Shown here: piece by piece, positions 1,678 through 13,585 of the stretch
Layout: each line of letters starts with the position of its first letter
Position numbering within the stretch: position 1 is the first letter of the stretch
NCBI RefSeq assembly: GCF_006345805.1
Contig: NW_021825865.1
Location: 1-14,169, forward strand
From: Octopus sinensis
Taxonomy: Eukaryota
Direction: 5' to 3'
DNA: 14,169 nt
Program-made: the position numbers and the translations under genes
Notes under the pieces: model-generated
Told to the model about the DNA's origin: nothing
The model's input: only the letters and a program-made list of their open reading frames with translations
Databases searched by the model: none

Positions 1678-2090
1678 CTGACTCAAATTCATTTACAATG
1701 GTACCAATCGTCACCACTTCAGAGTCCTCCGACACCGTGATGATGAGATCGTCTGCGTACGCCGACACTGCCCTCCTGAGTCCAGTGAAAGCAGGCAGCT
1801 CTGACGGACCGAACGTGCGATACTAAACGGTTCTGATAGATGGCCATTTGCTTTGACCACCGAGCAGGTGGCACTGTGCATTGCAGCAATCCAGCCTCTG
1901 AAAACGGGTCCGAAACCGACCCTTTTAGGGATGGATTCCAGGTAGCGATGGTCTACCCTATCGAAAGCTTTCGATTGATTCAAATTGATCAGGGCCCCAC
2001 TAAGCCAACTTTAGCCCCTGCCCTCTGTACGATGTATCGCACAAGGTGGGGTTGTTGTGGATAAACCTCTTTGGTAAAGTGTAAACCTGT
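1678..2090 (-). pseudogene. Inverted Tx1-like reverse transcriptase fragment
   Basis: Minus strand reads IHNN..LVRYIVQR...LINLNQSKAFDRVDHRYL..GFGPVFRGWI..NGHLSEPFSIARSVRQSCLLS, then after a ~75-nt deletion AVSAYADDLIITVS..NEFES. YADD codons are at 1748-1759. It is collinear with 6700-7150 of the second element. Confidence 0.9.
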
Positions 2091-2094
2091 GAGT

Positions 2095-2375
2095 CGGAAG
2101 AAAAGAGTTAGAGAGGACTCTCGTCCTTGGTATTTAGGGTGATCTTGGATGGGGGGGGGGTCCTCGATTATCCCTAGTGGTCCTCCTGTATCAAGGAGAC
2201 CCCATCACTATAATTTTTCCTTCTTTATCTAGTGTCATATACTATGTATATTTCACTTCTTCTAATGTATATCGTGTATACTATTTTTTTCATTCCAACA
2301 TGTGTAAACCCCCACACTTTATGTCTGCTTTTGTATTGACCCCTCATCCTTCGCCCTGGTGGCAAATAAAAGAAA

Positions 2376-2410
<35 letters not shown>
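2095..2410 (+). other. Putative LINE 3' UTR with polyadenylation signal and (ATT)11 tail
   Basis: Non-coding; G-run at 2150-2160, AATAAA at 2365-2370, (ATT)11 at 2378-2410. The last ~57 nt resemble SINE tail type 2. Confidence 0.6.
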
Positions 2411-3072
<662 letters not shown>

Positions 3073-5043: not shown

Positions 5044-8000
5044 ATGACTAAACTCAGAATAGGTTGCTTAAATGTGAGAGGCCTCGGGTCACCTTGGAAA
5101 CAGGGGCACCTGTTAAACGACCTGAGGTTTCACAGCGTGGATGTAGCAGCCATTAGTAAAACCAGGCTCTCCGACCCGCAGGAATTCGCGGCCCTTTTCG
5201 GCGGATACGAGATTTTGTTATCTCTGTGTCGGCCGGGAGCGGGCGGTGGTGGCACTGCGGTGTTGTTTCGGAAGGGCCTGAATTTGAAAATAAGGACAGT
5301 CTTCCTGGATCCAGAAGGTAAGTTGGTGGTCCTCGACGTAGACGGTAGTGATGGCGGTGCTTTCAGACTGCTGGCTGCCTACGCTCCGACAGGAGCAGGG
5401 CAGTCCGATTATTTCAAGCGTCTGGAAGTTTTCTTAGGAACGTCACGCACTCTAGTGCTAGTTGGGGATTGGAACGCTATCTTAGACGAACGTTTCGATC
5501 GGGTGGGCACGGGAGCATCTGATAGGAGAGGAGGGTGCAAGAGCCAACCTGCTCAGGCGCTTTCAGCTGTCCGACAGGTTTCGACTAGACAACCCGAATG
5601 TGCCAATGTGGACTTGGACTAATCGCATCGGGTCATCTAGATCGTACTTAGAGTGTTTTGTAGGCCAGCGGATAAGGACAGCATAGGGTGTCCACAATTC
5701 CACCTAGTCGACTACACGGACCACAAATTCGTTATCTGTACGGTCGACTTAGATAGGCTACATAGACAGGGACCCGGCTACTGGAAGCTGAACGCGTCGT
5801 CAACGGCTTGCAAAGCTTACAGAGACCGGATTAGTTTATTAGTTAAACGGGCGCTCACGGGGCAATCATCAACAACAACTGGTGGTTTCCTCTCAAGAGA
5901 GCAATTAGAGCAGAGTCGATTAGGTTTAGTAAGTCTCTAGCTGTAGAACATAGGAAAACAGAGCGGGAATTAGTTAGAAAACTAGACGAGGCTCTTGAGA
6001 CAGGCATCGCAACCGACGTGTTGGCGGCTAGGTTGGCCCTCGACCAACACTTTGACGCCAAACATGAAGGTTGCGTTGTCAGAGCTAAGGCGCGTTCGCT
6101 AAGCGGGGAGGGAACTAAGGCCGCTCGATGGGCCCGCGTGGCGGAGGCGAAGCATGGCATCAACGCGACCATTCGGTCTTTGGTGGACCAGAACGGGCGC
6201 GAGGTTTCCGAACCGAAGCAGATGTGTGCGGTGTTTCAGCAACACTTTGCTCTATTGTTTGGGACGAACGGTGGGACGGACAACGGTACAGACTTCGGTG
6301 TGTACCTGGACGGCCTACCGCAACTCTGGGACAGCGAGGCGGAGTGATGCGAAAGGCCGATATCTGCCTGGGAAATGGAAGAAGCGATGAAAACCTGCAC
6401 GAGAGGTAGATCGCCGGGTTTGGATGGTCTGCCCTTCGAGCTTTACATTTCAATGCCAGACTTGTTTGCGGGCCTCTTGGCAAACGTCTACTGCAACTGG
6501 CAGCAAAACGGGAGAATTCTTGCTTTTGTTTGTCGAGGAGTGTTGGCTTTGCTGAGAAAGGATCCAAACAAGGGGGACGTTATAGGGAACTTTCGGCCCA
6601 TCACTCTGCTCAATGCAGAGTTGAAGATGCTGGCCAAGGTGTTAGCCAAGAGATTGGCGCTTGTCGTGGACAAGCTGATTGACAAGGCGCAGACATGCGC
6701 CGTGCCGACCAGGTCAATGCACGATAATCTCCATCTCATATGCTACATCATAGAGAGGGTGGGTAAAGACGCTGGCGCGGGTGGGGTTTTGATCAATTTA
6801 GATCAGAGTAAAGCCTTCGATAGGGTCGACCATCGATACCGGTTTCGGTCCAGTCTTCCGCGGGTGGATTTCTGCTTTATACAGCAACATCTGCTCGGTA
6901 ATACGGGTGAATGGTCACCTTTCGGAGCCGTTTAACATCACGCGTTCGGTCCGCCAAGGATGCCCTCTCTCCTACCTCTTGTACATATTGACTCTCGAGC
7001 CATTACTGCGCAAGTTGGAGGCTTTGAGGGGTATCCCGCGTGATCTAGGAGGTGGAAACAGCGTGTCTGCCTATGCCGACGACGTCACCGTGATGGTGTC
7101 GAGCCACAGGCACATTGACCTGATCGGTGAGACACTAAACGAGTACGAAGCGGTGACATGGGCAAAAATTAACGCGGAAAAGTCCATGGGCTTGCAACTG
7201 GGCACCCGGAGAGGCAAGTCCATGCCGTCCAACAGCGTCGTATGGCGCTGGACAGACGGACCCGTTAAACTGCTCGGGGTCTGGTTCGGTCCGAACCTCC
7301 AGGTGGATAAAAACTGGGAAGAAGTGACGAGCAGGGTGGCCAATCTCACCCAGAAATGGGCCGAGAGGAAGCTGTCCCTGGAAGGCCGGGCGGAGGTGCG
7401 AATGCGTACATCGCATCCGTCATCATTTACCGCTTGACCGTCGTCCCTTGTCCCGACCGCTGGTTGACCAAGCTGGTGCGCTTGCTCTTCGACTTTTTGT
7501 ATAAGGGTCAGGTACCACTGGTCAGGCGATCCATCTGCTGTCAACGGCCGCTGAACGGAGGCCTTGGCATGCCGTGGTTACTGATGCGCAGACATGCGCT
7601 CAGGCTACGGCATCTCAAGCGTTTCCTAGACGGTGAACAGGTGTGGTCGTCTTTTGTCAGACGCGACTTTCCGCAGCTCGTCTCTTTGACAGAGCTGCAA
7701 TCCTGGATCAAACGCAGACCGAGAAAGGGCGCTTGGCACCTCGAGTGCCGTCAAGTTCTCTCCGCCCTCCACCATGCGGGCAATGCGATCGGTAGTAGTT
7801 CCACTCTAGCGTTCTATAGAGGGTTAGTGGAAGAAAAGTGCGACGACGTTCTCGGGGAAACTCTAGACGTTGACGATAACGAGCTAAGCAGTCTGTACGG
7901 AAGGACTTTCGGGCCGGGGCCAATGGACAATTTCTAAAAGTCCCTCGCCTGGCAGTGCTGCCGAGGGGTGCTGCCAGGACGACGAAACCGTTCTGCACGC

Positions 8001-8125
8001 ACTCGTCCAGTGTCCGAATATTGCTGAACTATGGGTTCATGTCGAACAGCTACTGTCGCGTGTAGGACGGATCCGGCTATCGGCTGAATCCATAGTGAAG
8101 ATTGCCCCGCCGACCTCCTTTAACC
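5044..8125 (+). pseudogene. Tx1-like ORF2: APE endonuclease + reverse transcriptase + C-terminal Zn-finger remnant
   Basis: EN: GCLNVRGL, GDWNA, TDH, GPGYWKLN. RT: RSPGLDGLPFELY, NFRPITLLNAELK, DQSKAFDRVDH, RQGCPLS, YADD, KLLGVWFG. C-terminus: CQDDETVLHALVQCP. Lesions: TGA at 6345-6347, TAA at 7935-7937, a ~23-nt deletion at 6840/6841, several frameshifts, and K in place of the conserved E of the EN xET motif (ISKTRL). Confidence 0.95.
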
Positions 8126-8251
8126 CGTCGACTTTGCATTTCATCCTTTCGGGGTCGATAAATTAAGTACCAATTGCGTACTGGGGTCGGTGTGATCGAT
8201 TGTCCCCTTCCCCACAAAAATCCAGGCTTTGTGCCTTTGGTAGAAAGGATT
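8126..8251 (+). mobile_element. 5'-truncated family A SINE, tail type 1
   Basis: GTCGACTTTGCATTTCATCCTTTCGGGGTCGATAAATTAAGTACC...GGCTTTGTGCCTTTGGTAGAAAGGATT matches the 3' half of the 71-299 copy. Confidence 0.8.
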
Positions 8252-8667
8252 GTTTTTTTATTCTTTCGTAACACAGTGTAGGTAAAAATGCACCGGAGTC
8301 TTTAGTCATCTGCCATGTGACAACAAGGTCCTGAGACAGATGATACTTTCCTTAAGATGTGCGTTATACCCAATAAGGCTGCTTTTTGCAAGACATCAAT
8401 CTTGAGCCCGACGCTCCGATCACCACTTGTATCACTTTTACATTACCCTCTTGCATTCCATACAGTCTTGTTATTTCCACTTTCAATTCGGAGTACTTGG
8501 TGATTTTCTCAACCTCTTTACTCACAACATTCATGTAATCTGATATAGCTACATCAATGATCTGATAGTATTTGTCTCTCTTATTCAATATGAAAATCAT
8601 AGTCCCAGAGCATCGTTACTTTTTCATCTTCCTGCATATCTTTACTTGGTACATGCTCATACCAGTT
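8252..8667 (-). pseudogene. R4/Dong-type non-LTR retrotransposon 3' fragment (restriction-like endonuclease domain + short 3' UTR)
   Basis: Minus strand: WYEHVPSK..EDEKVTMLWD / MIFILNKRDK..QIIDVAI...KEVEKITKYSELKVEITRL...VKVIQVVIGASG / LQKAALLGITHILRKV, the typical R4/Dong RLE layout. AATAAA lies at 8257-8262 (minus). Confidence 0.8.
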
Positions 8668-8676
8668 CGACTTTGC

Positions 8677-8819
8677 GAGGTTGACTTTGCCTTTAATCCT
8701 TTCGGGGTCGATTAAAAAAGTACCAGTTACGCACTGGGGTCGATATAATCGACTTAATCCGTTTGTCTGTCCTTGTTTGTCCTCTCTGTGTTTAGCTCCT
8801 TGTGGGTAGTAAAGAAATA
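8677..8819 (+). mobile_element. 5'-truncated family A SINE, tail type 2
   Basis: Body as in the other copies, then ...GTTTGTCTGTCCTTGTTTGTCCTCTCTGTGTTTAGCTCCTTGTGGGTAGTAAAGAAATA. Confidence 0.85.
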
Positions 8820-9000
8820 AGTATTTCGTCTATCTTTACGTTCTGAGTTCAAATTCCGCTGAGGTCGACTTTGCCTTTCATCTTTTCGGGGTCGATGAAA
8901 TAAGCACCAGTTACGCACTGGGGTCGCTATAATCTACTAGTCCCCTCCACCAAATTTCAGGCCTTGTGTCTATAGTAGATTATTATTATTATTATTATTA
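8820..9000 (+). mobile_element. Family A SINE body starting at the (A)GTATTT site, tail type 1 with (ATT)n
   Basis: GTATTTCGTCTATCTTTACGTTCTGAGTTCAAATTCC...GGCCTTGTGTCTATAGTAG followed by (ATT)7. Confidence 0.85.
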
Positions 9001-9069
9001 CCGATTTTGTCTGCCTTGTATCGTCTATCTGTCCGAATGTTTTATTGTCCTCTATTTGGGTTTTGCTCC

Positions 9070-9073
<4 letters not shown>

Positions 9074-9137
<64 letters not shown>

Positions 9138-9330
9138 TTGTGTGTCTGTGTTTGTCCCCCTAGCATTGCTTGACAACCGATGCTGGTGTGTTTATGTCCC
9201 CGTTACTTAGCGGTTCGGCAAAAGAGACCGATAGAATAAGTCCCGGGGTTGAATTGCTCGATTAAAGGCGGTGCTCCAGCATGGCCGCAGTCAAATGACT
9301 GAAACAGTAAAAGAGTAAAAGAGTAAAAGA

Positions 9331-9333
<3 letters not shown>
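9074..9333 (+). mobile_element. Family B SINE 3' module preceded by (TA)n(TG)n, ending in (GTAAAAGA)3
   Basis: GCTTGACAACCGATGCTGGTGTG...CGGTTCGGCAAAAGAGACCGATAGAATAAG...CCAGCATGGCCGCAGTCAAATGACTGAAAC; homologous to the minus-strand copies at 9764, 10006 and 12680. Confidence 0.8.
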
Positions 9334-9369
<36 letters not shown>

Positions 9370-9371
<2 letters not shown>

Positions 9372-9573
9372 GTTATATGTTACATTACTCGATAGTCAAG
9401 ATAAAACTCTGAGTTTCAGATGCCGAAGTGGGAATCCACGACATCTCTTCGGTTATCTGGCTATTTGAAAACGTTTTCAATAGCCAGATGACCGAAGAGA
9501 TGTCGTGGATTCCCACTTCGGCATCTGAAACTCAGTGTTTTATCTGACTATCGAGTAATGTAACATATAATTG
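9370..9573. mobile_element. Fully palindromic (foldback) MITE with TA flanks
   Basis: Arms 9366-9472 and 9473-9577 are reverse complements with 3 substitutions and 2 single-base indels, and no spacer. TA flanks at 9368-9369 and 9574-9575 suggest a Tc1/mariner-type TSD. Confidence 0.75.
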
Positions 9574-9641
9574 TATAGATAAATTTCCTCTATTTACATA
9601 ATATTGAGGTCTCTTTCTTCTTTTGTTATCTTACCATTTTA

Positions 9642-9644
<3 letters not shown>

Positions 9645-9731
<87 letters not shown>

Positions 9732-9760
9732 TATATATATATTTACATATATATATAGTA
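9645..9760. repeat. (TA)n microsatellite
   Basis: Long visible TA run. Confidence 0.95.
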
Positions 9761-9763
9761 TAT

Positions 9764-9993
9764 ATTTTTATTCGTTTATTTTTTCACTCATTTGACAATG
9801 GCCATGCTGGAGCACGCCTTAAAGGGTTTTATAGTCGAAGAACTCGACCCCAGGAATTATTGTTTTAAGAATAGTACTTATTCTATCGGTCTATTATGCC
9901 GAACCGCTAAATTACGCGAACGTAAACACGCCGACATCGGTTGTCAAGTGATGAGGGAGGGGAGGACAAACACAGATACAAAGACACACACAC
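9764..9993 (-). mobile_element. Family B SINE 3' module
   Basis: Reverse complement of the 9140-9305 module (CCATGCTGGAGCAC...TTCTATCGGTC...GAACCGCTAA...CGGTTGTCAAG). Confidence 0.8.
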
Positions 9994-10005
9994 CAATATA
10001 TATCA

Positions 10006-10221
10006 TTGCCTTGAAGAAATTGTAGTCGAATAAATCGACCCCAGTAATTATTTTCTTTTTTAAGGCGAGTACTTCTACCGGTTTCTTTTGGCAAACCGCT
10101 AAGTTACAGGGACGTAAAGACGCAAGACCGGTTGCCAAGCGGTGGTGGCCCACACACACACACAACACACACAATTATATATATATACAATATATACATA
10201 TACATACATATATATAATATA

Positions 10222-10259
<38 letters not shown>

Positions 10260-10421
10260 ACGTGATTCTTATAGTTTCCATCAACCAAATCCACTCACAA
10301 GGTTTTGATCGGTCTGAGGCTAGAGTAGAAGACACTCGCCGAAGGTGCCACACAGTAGGCCTGAACTCGGAACCATGTGTTTAGGAAACAAGCTTCTTAC
10401 CACACAAGCTACGCCTGCGCC
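10006..10421 (-). mobile_element. Family B SINE: tRNA-like head + CORE-like segment + internal microsatellite + 3' module
   Basis: Minus strand GGCGCAGGCGTAGCTTGTGTGGTAAGAAGC...GGTTCCGAGTTCAGG...GGCACCTTCGGCGAGTGTCTTCTAC, then (TA)n/(TG)n at ~10151-10254, then the 3' module. Confidence 0.8.
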
Positions 10422-10550
10422 TTAAAAGTGTGGCTTGCAAACCCGCTACAGAGAATCGAACGCCGTACCTCTCAAACTCCAGTTAAGCGTTCTGTATTGT
10501 TACGTTAAGCGACGCATGATAAATCTGTTCCAATGTATTCCTCTTTCTAG

Positions 10551-10781
10551 GGCGGCGAGCTGGCAGAAACGTTAGCACGCCGGATGAAATGCTTAGCGGT
10601 ATTTCGTCTGTCGTTACGTTGTGAGTTCAAATTCCGCCGAGGTCAACTTTGCCTTTCATCCTTTCGGGGTCGATAAATTAAGTACCAGTTACGCTCTGGG
10701 GTCGATATAATCGACTTAATACCTATGTCTGTCCTTGTTTGTCCCCTCTATGTTTAGCCCCTTGTGGGTAATAAAGAAATA
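10551..10781 (+). mobile_element. Young full-length family A SINE, tail type 2
   Basis: Complete head, B box GTTCAAATTCC at 10625-10635, tail ending AAAGAAATA; ~95% identical to the inverted copy. Confidence 0.9.
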
Positions 10782-11211
10782 GGTATTTTAGTCCGTCTTC
10801 ACGTTCAAGGTTCAAATACCTATTCTTTATTACCCACAAGGGGCTAAACATAGAGGGGACAAACAAGGACAGACATAGGTATTAAGTCGATTACATCGAC
10901 CCCAGTGTGTAACTGGTACTTAATTTATCGACCCCGAAAGGATGAAAGGCAAAGTCGACCACGGCGGAATTTGAACTCAGAACGTAACGGCAGACGAAAT
11001 ACCGCTAAGCATTTCTCCCGGCGCGCTAACGTGTCTGCCAGCTCGCCGCCTTAGTTGGTATTTGAACATGAAGGTTCAAATACCATCGAAGTCCTCATTG
11101 CCTTTCGGGTTGATAAAATAAGTACCAGAAGAGTACTGAAGTCAATGTAGTTGACCTACCCACTGCTCCGAAATTGCTGATCTCGTGCCAATATTTGAAA
11201 TCAATATTTTT
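10782..11211 (+). mobile_element. Older diverged family A SINE body, tail type 3, split by the inverted copy (pieces 10782-10820 and 11071-11211)
   Basis: GGTATTTTAGTCCGTCTTCACGTTCAAGGTTCAAATACC resumes as AAGGTTCAAATACCATCGAAGTC...GGGTTGATAAAATAAGTACCAG...CCGAAATTGCTGATCTCGTGCCAATATTTGAAATC. Confidence 0.7.
10821..11050 (-). mobile_element. Young full-length family A SINE, tail type 2, inverted, with a 14-bp TSD
   Basis: Reverse complement of 10551-10781 with 11 substitutions and 1 indel. AAGGTTCAAATACC occurs at both 10807-10820 and 11071-11084. Confidence 0.9.
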
Positions 11212-11289
11212 TGATAAATCTGTTTCAATATATTCCTCATTGCATTTTGTTTGTTATGTCCTGTTATTATTATTGTTTTTTTATTGTAT

Positions 11290-11570
11290 TTTGTATTGAT
11301 ATTCGTGTAACATCGTCTGTTTTTCCGTCCTTGTTTCGTATACTTTCGTTGCTTTTTTCCAAGGAATCTAATGCTCGTAGCTTAGTTTTTCCTTGGGGTT
11401 GGCTAGATTGGAGCAATCTCAAGATTAACCAGCCGAAATTGCGAGGATGATCCGGTTCTTGACTGAAGATAAAAGGCTTCGAATGACCCGTCCGTGTTTT
11501 TTTTTTTGTATCGTCTATCTGGATGTTTTGTTGTCCCGCTTTGCGTTCTTGTCCCATTTTGTATTTTATT
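11290..11570. repeat. Unclassified interspersed repeat ending at (TA)n
   Basis: Its last ~55 nt (TTGTATCGTCTATCT...ATGTTTT.TTGTCC...CCATTT) recur at 9016-9073, also directly before (TA)n. The left boundary is uncertain. Confidence 0.45.
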
Positions 11571-11586
11571 ATATATATATATATAT

Positions 11587-12216
11587 ATAAATTATTAGAG
11601 AGTTATCCACTATGTGGATAACTCTAGTGCTAAAAATAGCTCCGAAGCAACCACAGAAGATCCGTTTCCAACTGGAATCAACACACATTTAAATTAATAT
11701 CGATTTTTCACCCTCATTTATAATTTTATAAATTTAACCATGCGGCAGTTAATATTTTATTTGATGCGGCATACGTTTCCAATGGAGTCTAGGCATGCTT
11801 TTGGCGCGGAATTTGAGACATAACTAAAAATGTAATTGGTTGGACCGCTCGTGTTTTTGACGCTCGAATCGATCTAATTAATTGCATTTCTGACAAACTC
11901 TACCGAAGATTTATGGATGCAAGTGTAAGTAAAACTACATATTGCATTAGTAATGAAACATTGTATAGAGTCATCTATTTTATTCGTTGTATTTCACTTT
12001 CCTTCGGTTAAATGTGTGTTGATCCAGTTGGAAACGGATCTTCTGTGGGTTGCTTCGGAGCTATTTTTAGCACTAGAGTTTCCACTAGTGGATAACTCTC
12101 TAATAATTTATGTATAAATTTGTATTTTTCCGTGGGTTTTGTGCTAAGCCACTTGGTGTTAAATTGATGGTATTATTAATTAATATCGATTTTTCACCCT
12201 CATTTATAATTTTATA
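11587..12216. repeat. Composite repeat: ~104-bp inverted arms (11587-11692 / 12008-12111), each with a 26-bp palindrome, plus a 39-bp exact direct repeat (11692-11730 / 12178-12216)
   Basis: Directly visible; flanked by (TA)n on both sides. It could be a MITE or a tandem unit with a foldback. Confidence 0.8.
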
Positions 12217-12270
12217 TATATTATATATATATATATATATTATATAGCTGCGTACGTAGACGTAGTTCTC

Positions 12271-12679: not shown

Positions 12680-13242
12680 ATATTTTATCTTTTTCCTGGG
12701 TTCAGTCATTAGACTGCGGATATGGAGCAACGCCTTGACGGGTTTAATCGAACAAATCGACCCCAGTACTTAATCTTTAGTCTTCTAATGATTCTACCGG
12801 TTTCTTCGTCGAACTGCTAAGTTACGGGGATGTAGACAACCAGCACCAGTTGTCAAGCGATGGTAAGGGAAAACACAAAAACACACGCACAAATACACGC
12901 GCATACACACACACACATATACGTGTGCAAATATATATATATATATAGATAGATAGATAGATAGACAGACAGATAGATAGACAGACAGATAGATAGACAG
13001 ACAGATAGATAGATAGACAGATAGATAGATAAACAGATAGATAGATAAACAGATAGATAGATAAACAGATAGATAGATAGATAGATATAAAGTTCCTTTC
13101 AATTTCAGTCTACAAAATCCATTCACAAAGCTTTGGTCGGCCCGAGGCTATTGTAAAAGACATTTGCCCAAGATACCACGCAGTGGTACCGAGCCCGGAA
13201 CCATGTGGTTGGGAAGCAAGCCTCTTACCACATAGCCACGCC
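12680..13242 (-). mobile_element. Family B SINE, near full length, with an expanded internal (GATA/GACA)n
   Basis: Minus-strand head GGCGTGGCTATGTGGTAAGAGGCTTGCTTCCCAACCACATGGTTCCGGG...GGTATCTTGGGCAAATGTC; microsatellite at ~12900-13088; 3' module to ~12680. Confidence 0.8.
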
Positions 13243-13404: not shown

Positions 13405-13585
13405 CGGCGAGCAGACACAATCGTTAAGCACGCAGCATTTCTTCCAGTTCTACATTCTGAGTTCCAATTCTGCAGAAGTCGACTTTACCTTTCGTCCTGC
13501 CGGAAGTCATAAAATAATTACCAGTTGAGCAGTGGGGTCAAAGCAATCGACTAGCCTCCCCATAATTTCAAGCCTTATTCCCTTA
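13405..13585 (+). mobile_element. Old diverged family A SINE, tail type 1-like
   Basis: CGGCGAGC...ATTCTGAGTTCCAATTC...GTCGACTTTACCTTTCGTCC...ACCAGTTGAGCAGTGGGGTC...ATCGACT...AATTTCAAGCCTT. Confidence 0.7.

What the first reader, a model, noticed from the sequence alone, without database searches (positions are those of the whole stretch)
8677..11084. Candidate self-targeting, site-directed SINE: every tail-2 copy ends immediately before (G/A)GTATTT
Seen: three tail-2 3' ends, AAAGAAATA|AGTATTT (8811-8826), AAAGAAATA|GGTATTT (10773-10788) and minus-strand AAAGAATA|GGTATTT (10828-10814). GGTATTT is an internal motif of the same SINE family (10598-10604). The first two are followed by SINE bodies that differ in tail (type 1 vs type 3) and in divergence, which argues against one fixed dimer. 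The third sits on the opposite strand at a cryptic GGTATTT formed by a mutated B box (GTTCAAATTCC to GTTCAAATACC) and is bracketed by a 14-bp duplication, AAGGTTCAAATACC (10807-10820 / 11071-11084). Known: Tx1-clade endonucleases are often sequence-specific for multicopy targets, and TSDs mark target-primed reverse transcription. Inference: tail-2 SINEs are directed into older copies of their own family, by a site-specific Tx1-like endonuclease or by GGTATTT-primed annealing. This would build tandem arrays and inverted pairs. I do not know of a description of this.
Basis: partly seen in the sequence, partly recalled or inferred. Interest (0 to 1): 0.8.

Follow-up and report, generated by a model that had tools for sequence, protein, structure and literature searches.

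The report
Octopus SINE tails abutting GGTATTT motif
In this stretch of octopus DNA, three copies of one short mobile element all end just before the same 7-letter motif, which is not chance; but only one copy is a clear insertion into an older copy, two look like double units copied whole, and the single copy found elsewhere lacks the motif, so self-homing is possible but unproven.

Summary
All three tail-2 SINE ends in the window (8819, 10781, minus-strand 10821) are followed directly by RGTATTT, far beyond chance. The window is Octopus DNA. The only other tail-2 copy I could reach (O. bimaculoides, L001) is followed by (TA)n instead.

Only the minus-strand copy is a demonstrable insertion into an older SINE: both host halves are present, with a perfect 14-bp duplication. 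The two plus-strand cases lack the host's first 47 bases. One pair is bracketed as a whole by a 30-bp direct repeat. The other is 5'-truncated and sits next to non-SINE DNA. These two behave as two-unit elements moved as one piece.

Tail 2 is homologous to the 3' end of an L1-superfamily LINE present in the window. That LINE's own ends run into (ATT)n and do not sit at GGTATTT, which argues against an endonuclease-coded site.

My best reading is that GGUAUUU is carried at the 3' end of tail-2 RNA, because the first Pol III terminator after copy A lies inside GGTATTTT. It would then pair with nicked DNA and favour GGTATTT sites, which the family's own head supplies.

Sample size is four junctions. 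A genome-wide count is needed. Verdict: partly supported; a new variant of known mechanisms.

The parts
8676..8819 (+). Tail-2 SINE unit, 5'-truncated at SINE position 87; ends AAAGAAATA
   Evidence: BLAST to copy A: positions 87-230, 90% identity. Upstream is a minus-strand retroelement fragment, not a SINE head.
8820..9001 (+). Downstream unit starting at SINE position 48 (AGTATTT); tail 1 followed by (ATT)n
   Evidence: BLAST positions 48-165, 90% identity. Tail matches the tail-1 copies at 71-300 and L001 2022-2250.
10517..10546 (+). Left copy of the 30-bp direct repeat that brackets the pair A + older unit
   Evidence: 27/30 identical to 11212-11241 (D4, E=9e-5). Ends 4 bases before the start of A.
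10551..10781 (+). Copy A: full-length tail-2 SINE. B box at 10624-10636, internal GGTATTT at 10598-10604, no internal TTTT.
   Evidence: About 8 private substitutions relative to the other tail-2 copies.
10782..10820 (+). 5' part of the older tail-3 unit. It starts at SINE position 48 with GGTATTTT, which contains the first TTTT after A (10786-10789).
   Evidence: Aligns to SINE positions 48-86 (D3). TTTT position.
10807..10820 (+). Target-site duplication, copy next to the 3' end of the minus-strand SINE (AAGGTTCAAATACC; GGTATTTGAACCTT on the SINE's strand)
   Evidence: Identical 14-mer at 11071-11084. It holds the mutated B box.
10821..11050 (-). Full-length tail-2 SINE inserted into the older unit
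   Evidence: 95.2% identical to A. Forms a 232-nt inverted repeat with A (I1).
11051..11070 (.). 20-nt filler at the 5' junction of the minus-strand copy; a fold-back copy of the target
   Evidence: 18-nt arm 11050-11067 is 89% complementary to 11074-11091, with a 6-nt loop (I5).
11071..11084 (+). Second copy of the 14-bp target-site duplication
11085..11211 (+). Rest of the older unit: core and tail 3, ending TTTGAAATCAATATTTTT
   Evidence: Joining 10782-10820 to 11085-11215 restores a continuous unit. It aligns to A (69%) and to the L001 tail-3 copy (69%).
11212..11241 (+). Right copy of the 30-bp bracketing direct repeat
   Evidence: D4.
2318..2410 (+). 3' end of an L1-superfamily LINE (…GGCAAATAAAAGAAATC) followed by (ATT)11; homologous to tail 2
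   Evidence: MAFFT alignment with four tail-2 ends and two further LINE or LINE-like ends, 22 invariant columns. The 3' UTR matches L001 14880-15165; by eye it also resembles the 3' UTR of L090, but BLAST found no such match.
5044..8121 (+). Degraded ORF2 (endonuclease + reverse transcriptase + zinc-finger region) of the same LINE family. Its own 3' end is missing.
   Evidence: Pfam Exo_endo_phos and RVT_1; frameshifts; 75% DNA identity to L090, whose intact 912-aa ORF2 runs about 85 codons further. Best solved relative is human L1 ORF2p, 3e-50.
8127..8265 (+). 5'-truncated tail-1 SINE (from about position 91) fused to the truncated LINE

Best explanation
The motif travels with the element and then guides it.

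1. Tail 2 is a copy of the last ~60 bases of an L1-superfamily LINE, but it lacks that LINE's (ATT)n tail and has no Pol III terminator of its own (shown).
2. A tail-2 unit is therefore transcribed into whatever follows it (inferred). In copy A the first TTTT lies inside GGTATTTT, so its RNA would end ...AAAUAGGUAUUUU (inferred from the shown TTTT position).
3. During target-primed reverse transcription, a nicked DNA end ...AAATACC-3' can pair with that RNA end (inferred). This favours integration next to GGTATTT.
4. The commonest genomic source of GGTATTT is positions 48-54 of the family's own head (inferred). A mutated B box supplies the site for the minus-strand copy here (shown).
5. A unit that lands at position 48 of another SINE is then transcribed from its own promoter through the host's 3' part (inferred). 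This gives a two-unit RNA that carries a proper LINE-recognised tail (tail 1 or tail 3 with (AUU)n).
6. Such dimers spread as single pieces (inferred). The two plus-strand cases are daughters of this kind; the minus-strand copy is a primary event.

Shown: the junction sequences, the duplications, the missing host heads, the LINE homology and the position of TTTT. Inferred: the RNA 3' end, the pairing step, and the founder-then-dimer history.
For: - All 3 tail-2 ends in the window are followed by RGTATTT.
- The minus-strand copy has both host halves and a perfect 14-bp duplication beginning with GGTATTT.
- No host head lies upstream of either plus-strand unit. A 30-bp repeat (27/30) brackets A + older unit. 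Case 1 is 5'-truncated at position 87, as expected for a long RNA copied by a LINE.
- The downstream units belong to different subfamilies (69% identity), so the junction formed at least twice.
- Tail 2 is homologous to the LINE 3' end. The LINE or LINE-like ends are followed by (ATT)n and unrelated flanks, so the site is not dictated by the enzyme alone.
- A has no internal TTTT; the first is at 10786-10789.
- SINEs of this genome do land in each other's tails: tail-3 SINE-(ATT)7-tail-1 SINE at L001 1804-2245.
- Precedents: L1 priming depends on base pairing between the nicked DNA and the RNA 3' end (PMC3649969). The first base of the duplication correlates with the RNA's 3' repeat in RTE-related SINEs (PMC6007223). 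Co-transcribed target sequence is proposed to strengthen specific integration of R-type elements (discussed in PMC4494074).
Against: - There are only four tail-2 junctions in all.
- The one from another genome region (L001) ends in (TA)n with no GG, which the model explains only by a different source copy or by internal priming.
- Case 1 has AGTATTT, not GGTATTT.
- There is no direct evidence for the RNA 3' end or for read-through.
- The 30-bp repeat could instead belong to an older full-length host whose head was replaced by homology-driven 5' joining.
- Two different downstream subfamilies require at least two founder events, none of which was observed.
- Homology of tail 2 to the LINE end is moderate (59% mean column identity across 7 sequences).
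- Endonuclease preference cannot be excluded with three LINE ends.
Confidence: 0.4

Rival explanations
1. The partner LINE's endonuclease nicks specifically at AAATACC^N, so all three tail-2 units are primary insertions into older genomic SINE copies. The missing host heads result from target deletions or from homology-driven 5' joining that replaces the host's head.
For: The same 7-mer lies next to all three ends. Two of the three GGTATTT sites in the window that pre-date the tail-2 insertions are occupied, and both lie in one 170-bp older unit, on opposite strands. Tx1-clade LINEs are often site-specific, and SINEU-3 shares the target of Tx1-Mar (PMC4494074).
Against: The host head is absent in 2 of 2 plus-strand cases. 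The head of A is of the tail-2 type, not the tail-3 type (4 differences in 46 from the minus-strand copy). The three LINE or LINE-like 3' ends have (ATT)n and unrelated flanks. The L001 tail-2 copy is not at GGTATTT. The Tx1 clade was not established.
Confidence: 0.15
2. The pairs are chimeras made during a single reverse-transcription event. The enzyme starts on a tail-1 or tail-3 SINE RNA and stops or pauses at position 48. There the new DNA end ...AAATACC-3' pairs with the GGUAUUU end of a tail-2 RNA. The enzyme jumps to that RNA and continues.
For: It explains the missing host heads, the bracketing 30-bp repeat, the 5' truncation and the varied downstream subfamilies without any founder loci. 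The window holds another fusion of a 5'-truncated SINE to an internally truncated LINE (8121|8127). Template jumping by non-LTR reverse transcriptases, and the U6-L1 chimeras, are established (my own knowledge).
Against: There is no reason for a pause exactly at position 48. It lies at the loop side of a 13-bp hairpin, whereas pausing is expected on entry to a stem. This model also needs the tail-2 RNA to end in GGUAUUU. From local sequence it cannot be told apart from the dimer model.
Confidence: 0.2
3. Common descent plus coincidence. One old dimer family fixed the junction, its right units later diverged or were converted, and the third case is a chance hit on a GGTATTT.
For: The sample is small. 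All tails of this superfamily end in GAAAxx(ATT)n-like sequence, and GGTATTT can be read as a degenerate form of it.
Against: The right units are only 69% identical and carry different tails. A chance start of a 14-bp duplication with GGTATTT has a probability of about 1/16,000.
Confidence: 0.1

Closest known systems
SINEU-3 and Tx1-Mar in crocodilians (Kojima 2015, PMC4494074)
   Same: A SINE mobilised by an L1/Tx1-type LINE that lands at one short site inside another interspersed repeat. It has a defined duplication, and tandem copies sandwich a duplication.
   Different: There the target is a foreign Mariner transposon, and the partner LINE shares the target. Here the target motif lies in the SINE's own family, and the LINE ends seen do not share it.
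Base-pairing control of priming in L1-type and R-type elements (L1 'snap-velcro', PMC3649969; read-through target sequence in R1/R2, as discussed in PMC4494074)
   Same: The 3' end of the template RNA pairs with the nicked DNA end, which biases or fixes the integration point.
   Different: In L1 the pairing is poly(A) with T-tracts. In R1/R2 it supports an already sequence-specific endonuclease. Here a 7-base heteropolymer would do the guiding for a non-autonomous element.
Dimeric and composite SINEs (Alu; tRNA dimers and trimers cited in PMC4758252)
   Same: Two SINE units joined at a fixed junction that transpose as one element.
   Different: Known dimers have one fixed architecture. Here the right unit varies in subfamily, and the left unit also occurs alone.
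Chimeric retrocopies from template switching (U6-L1 and related; my own knowledge)
   Same: A full small RNA copy is joined to a 5'-truncated second retro-element, and the whole is flanked by one duplication.
   Different: In those chimeras the truncation point of the 3' partner varies. Here it is the same position twice.
Microsatellite-targeting Tx1 elements Kibi and Koshi (cited in PMC4494074) and the tail/duplication correlation of RTE SINEs (PMC6007223)
   Same: Elements with simple-repeat tails insert where the same repeat already exists. In L001, SINEs sit in each other's (ATT)n tails.
   Different: GGTATTT is not a microsatellite.

Membership tests
tRNA-related LINE-tailed SINE (octopus CORE-type, OR2-like) | Internal Pol III promoter (A and B boxes) in a tRNA-like head | tested here: inconclusive
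   A B-box-like GAGTTCAAATTCC and a stable head fold are present (z = -3.6). ARAGORN and Rfam find no tRNA. The resemblance to the CORE domain is recalled from memory, not tested.
tRNA-related LINE-tailed SINE (octopus CORE-type, OR2-like) | 3' tail shared with a LINE | tested here: met
   Tail 2 aligns with LINE 3' ends at window 2318-2377 and L001 15090-15165.
tRNA-related LINE-tailed SINE (octopus CORE-type, OR2-like) | Dispersed copies with target-site duplications | tested here: met
   Eight units in the window and six in L001. A 14-bp duplication flanks the minus-strand copy and a 30-bp repeat flanks A + older unit.
Tx1 clade of non-LTR retrotransposons | AP-endonuclease + reverse transcriptase of the L1 superfamily | tested here: met
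   Pfam Exo_endo_phos and RVT_1; zf-RVT in the intact relative P0121. Human L1 ORF2p 3e-50 versus R2 4e-24.
Tx1 clade of non-LTR retrotransposons | Placement inside the Tx1 clade in a reverse-transcriptase phylogeny | not testable with these tools
   No reference set of classified LINEs was available. L1-Tx1 families are reported as recently active in O. vulgaris (PMC13282606).
Sequence-specific SINE/LINE pair (as SINEU-3 / Tx1-Mar) | Most copies sit at the same target sequence with the same duplication | tested here: inconclusive
   3 of 4 tail-2 ends abut RGTATTT. Only one has a duplication that proves target origin.
Sequence-specific SINE/LINE pair (as SINEU-3 / Tx1-Mar) | The partner LINE shows the same target | tested here: not met
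   Three LINE or LINE-like 3' ends (window 2377, L001 15165, L001 11874 rc) run into (ATT)n, and where a flank can be read it is unrelated. The sample is small.
Dimeric SINE | Two units at a fixed junction, flanked as a whole by one duplication | tested here: met
   The junction 'tail-2 end | position 48' occurs twice (8819|8820, 10781|10782). A 30-bp repeat brackets the second pair.
Dimeric SINE | Many copies descending from dimer master genes | not testable with these tools
   No octopus genome could be searched by DNA.

The most novel reading that the evidence does not exclude
A SINE subfamily homes into its own family without a site-specific enzyme. Its RNA ends in a 7-base sequence identical to a motif in the family's head, so base pairing at the nick steers new copies to position 48 of older copies. 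Each such hit creates a read-through dimer that borrows the host's better LINE tail and spreads faster. The result is a self-reinforcing loop that builds tandem and inverted SINE clusters in octopus genomes.
Probability: 0.25. Interest if true: 0.65.

Novelty: new variant of a known kind. Interest (0 to 1): 0.42.

Why it matters
SINEs make up about 11.6% of an octopus genome (PMC13282606), and what shapes their clustering is not described. If pairing between an RNA end and DNA alone can make a non-autonomous element home into its own relatives, three things follow. It would show that target specificity can arise without change in the enzyme. It would explain how composite SINEs are born repeatedly. 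It would also give a source of long inverted repeats: here the arms are 232 nt and 95% complementary. Such repeats can form hairpin RNAs or fragile sites. If the genome-wide count shows random flanks, the finding reduces to an ordinary dimeric SINE plus one lucky insertion.

Tried and rejected
Attempts to obtain more tail-2 junctions:
1. An exact-pattern scan of metagenome and viral contigs with GTGGGTARTAAAGAAATA gave 76 + 11 hits. None contained the SINE, so all were chance matches.
2. A protein search with the reverse-transcriptase fragment gave one O. bimaculoides protein and hence locus L001. The many long ENA contigs belong to another organism that lacks this SINE.
3. A search with a joined ORF2 saturated the word filter and gave five hits. 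One of them, P0121, led to locus L090, an intact LINE on a 3-kb contig.
4. A six-frame translation of the SINE gave three UniProt octopus proteins with exonised tail-1 SINEs. The two I looked up (P0127, P0128) are not on record for locus retrieval; P0126 was not tried.
5. Logan contigs carrying the LINE hold no SINE and no LINE 3' end.
6. The window's own ORFs are not in the collection.
7. Full-text searches for SINE strings in papers found nothing. The supplement of the O. vulgaris repeat paper holds no sequences.

Ideas rejected:
- The LINE at 5044-8265 is not the tail-1 partner. The 'shared tail' is a separate 5'-truncated SINE fused to a LINE that has lost its own end.
- The right units were not inserted later into the tail of an older tail-2 unit: I saw no duplicate of the tail-2 end after the right unit in case 1.
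- The inverted pair is not a DNA-level fold-back duplication of A. Beyond GGTATTT the arms share nothing, and a direct 14-bp duplication is present.
- Rfam miRNA hits on the palindromes are all below the gathering score.
- The 9-bp complementarity between the start of tail 2 and ATAGGTATT (I6) is present only in A and the minus-strand copy, and is about what chance gives.
Full report
Source and setting. The window is octopus nuclear DNA. A reverse-transcriptase fragment from it (6375-6935) hits an Octopus bimaculoides protein (P0061). The 21.7-kb locus fetched for that protein (L001, chromosome CM046623.1) carries the same SINE at 89-91% identity. The window is a dense pile of retro-elements and microsatellites, with no tRNA gene and no Rfam family above threshold.

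SINE anatomy. I number the SINE from copy A (10551-10781, 231 nt).
- The head runs to about position 90, with the B-box-like GAGTTCAAATTCC.
- A core at positions 91-165 is shared by all units.
- A variable tail follows.
- GGTATTT occupies positions 48-54 and forms the 3' arm of a predicted 13-bp hairpin in the head.

BLAST with A finds eight units in the window:
- 71-300: full length, tail 1 + (ATT)n.
- 8127-8265: 5'-truncated, tail 1.
- 8676-8819: tail 2, starting at position 87.
- 8820-9001: starting at position 48, tail 1 + (ATT)n.
- A itself: tail 2.
- 10821-11050 on the minus strand: tail 2, 95.2% identical to A.
- The split older unit 10782-10820 + 11085-11211: starting at position 48, tail 3.
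- A diverged unit near 13450.

Checking the observation. The window has exactly three tail-2 ends, and each is followed directly by RGTATTT. The motif occurs 11 times on both strands against 6 expected, so three independent coincidences are out of the question. The 14-bp duplicate AAGGTTCAAATACC (10807-10820 / 11071-11084) is exact and includes the mutated B box.

Removing the minus-strand copy, one duplicate and 20 extra bases restores a continuous older unit. That unit aligns along its length with A and with a tail-3 copy from L001. The 20 extra bases (11051-11070) are an inverted copy, 16 of 18, of the target at 11074-11091 (I5). This is a fold-back made at the 5' junction. So the minus-strand copy is a real nested insertion whose target began with GGTATTT.

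Are the other two also insertions into older copies? A primary insertion leaves both halves of its host, as the minus-strand copy does. Neither plus-strand case does.
- Upstream of A there is no SINE head. Instead there is a 30-bp sequence (10517-10546) that recurs, 27 of 30, immediately after the (ATT)-like end of the older unit (11212-11241, E=9e-5, D4). The pair A + older unit is therefore bracketed like a single insertion.
- The head of A is of the tail-2 type (4 differences in 46 from the minus-strand copy), not the tail-3 type.
- In the first case the tail-2 unit is cut at position 87 and abuts the end of a minus-strand retroelement fragment (…NWYEHVPSK…). This is the pattern expected for a 5'-truncated copy of a longer RNA.

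The two downstream units are only 69% identical to each other. They carry different tails, and tail 3 is a genuine subfamily seen full-length in L001. So the same junction, tail-2 end to position 48, arose at least twice. These loci, however, look like secondary copies of two-unit elements, or like chimeras made in one reverse-transcription event. They do not look like hits on resident copies.

The LINE partner. The window's LINE (ORF2 at 5044-8121: endonuclease, reverse transcriptase, zinc-finger region, many frameshifts) belongs to the L1 superfamily. An intact relative (P0121, 68% identical) matches human L1 ORF2p at 3e-50 and R2 proteins at 4e-24. Whether it falls in the Tx1 clade could not be tested. 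L1-Tx1 families are reported as recently active in O. vulgaris (PMC13282606).

Compared with the intact relative, the window copy has lost its last ~85 codons and its 3' UTR, and it is fused to a 5'-truncated tail-1 SINE. It therefore says nothing about which LINE owns tail 1. The true 3' end of this LINE family is present elsewhere: window 2030-2377 and L001 14880-15165. Its last ~60 bases align with tail 2 (…TGTCTG.C.TTGT.TTG…CCCCTC…GTGG.AAATAA.AGAAAT).

The LINE ends read GAAATC followed by (ATT)n, and where a flank can be read it is unrelated. Tails 1 and 3 also end in GAAAxx(ATT)n-like sequence. Tail 2 alone lacks the repeat and reads GAAATA + GGTATTT. With three LINE or LINE-like ends available and none at GGTATTT, an enzyme-coded site is unlikely, though the sample is small.

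Outside the window. The only further tail-2 copy I could reach (L001 2877-2648) is full length and ends AAAGAAATA followed by (TA)n(TG)n. It lies in a TA-rich region. So 'every tail-2 copy' holds in the window but not in general. The total is three of four.

Mechanism. A has no run of four T inside it. The first such run is 10786-10789, within GGTATTTT. A Pol III transcript of A would therefore end …AAAUAGGUAUUUU.
- In L1-type integration, the nicked DNA end must pair with the RNA 3' end (PMC3649969). In RTE-related SINEs, the start of the duplication tracks the RNA's terminal repeat (PMC6007223).
- An RNA ending in GGUAUUU would pair best with …AAATACC-3'. That is exactly the primer implied by the minus-strand copy's duplication.
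- The most abundant source of that sequence is the family's own head.
- A unit landing at position 48 of another SINE would be transcribed through the host's 3' part. It would thereby gain a proper (AUU)n-bearing tail and spread as a dimer. This fits the two plus-strand cases.
- Octopus SINEs do land in each other's tails (L001 1804-2245), so pairing-guided clustering is already at work here.

I put this reading at 0.4. A single-event template jump at the same 7-base overlap is at 0.2, an endonuclease-coded site at 0.15, and common descent plus luck at 0.1.

Comparison with known systems. A site-directed SINE driven by a Tx1-type LINE is known: SINEU-3 inserts into one site of a Mariner element, with tandem copies sandwiching a duplication (PMC4494074). 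Pairing-guided priming, dimeric SINEs and template-switch chimeras are also known. The possibly new points are that the target motif belongs to the element's own family, and that the guide may be the RNA end rather than the enzyme. I found no description of this in the searched literature.

Limits. The conclusions rest on four junctions and on local structure.

Noticed in passing
window 9359-9584: Near-perfect 226-nt palindrome (93.9% self-complementary). It draws sub-threshold hits to several miRNA-precursor models, so it looks like a fold-back or MITE-like element.
   Followed up: partly
window 10547-11054: A and the minus-strand copy form a 232-nt inverted repeat, 95% complementary, with 44 nt between the arms. 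It could make a long hairpin RNA or a cruciform. The Rfam hit to MIR2630 is below the gathering score.
   Followed up: partly
window 11051-11070: The filler at the 5' junction of the nested SINE is an inverted copy of the adjacent target (16/18), as if the cleaved top strand snapped back on itself before second-strand synthesis.
   Followed up: partly
window 8121-8127: The LINE ORF2 stops about 85 codons short of its intact relative and is fused directly to a 5'-truncated tail-1 SINE. This is either an insertion with a deletion or a template-switch chimera.
   Followed up: partly
window 1794-2377: An inverted reverse-transcriptase fragment (1794-2063) lies next to the LINE 3' end (2030-2377). 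The arrangement resembles a 5' inversion by twin priming.
   Followed up: no
window 9001-9075 and 11506-11575: Two very short modules resembling the LINE 3' end, each followed by (TA)n. The first directly follows the (ATT)n of the pair at 8676-9001.
   Followed up: no
window 11573-12219: Inverted repeat 11573-11692 / 12008-12125 (93%), like terminal inverted repeats of a small DNA transposon. There is also a 42-nt direct repeat at 11692-11733 / 12178-12219 (97.6%).
   Followed up: no
window 9128-9320, 9790-9990, 10020-10150, 12700-12900; 10270-10415, 13100-13242: Two further SINE-like families are present. One ends in (AC)n(AT)n; the other is tRNA-like. Together with long (TA)n, (TG)n, (ATT)n and (GATA)n arrays, they make this a repeat-nest region.
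   Followed up: no
L001 1804-2245: A tail-3 SINE, (ATT)7, then a tail-1 SINE in tandem. SINEs of this genome insert into each other's microsatellite tails.
   Followed up: partly
window 2941-3070: A 130-bp (ATT)n/(ATC) array lies immediately upstream of the 5' end of the LINE. This may mean the LINE family integrates into (ATT)n tracts.
   Followed up: no
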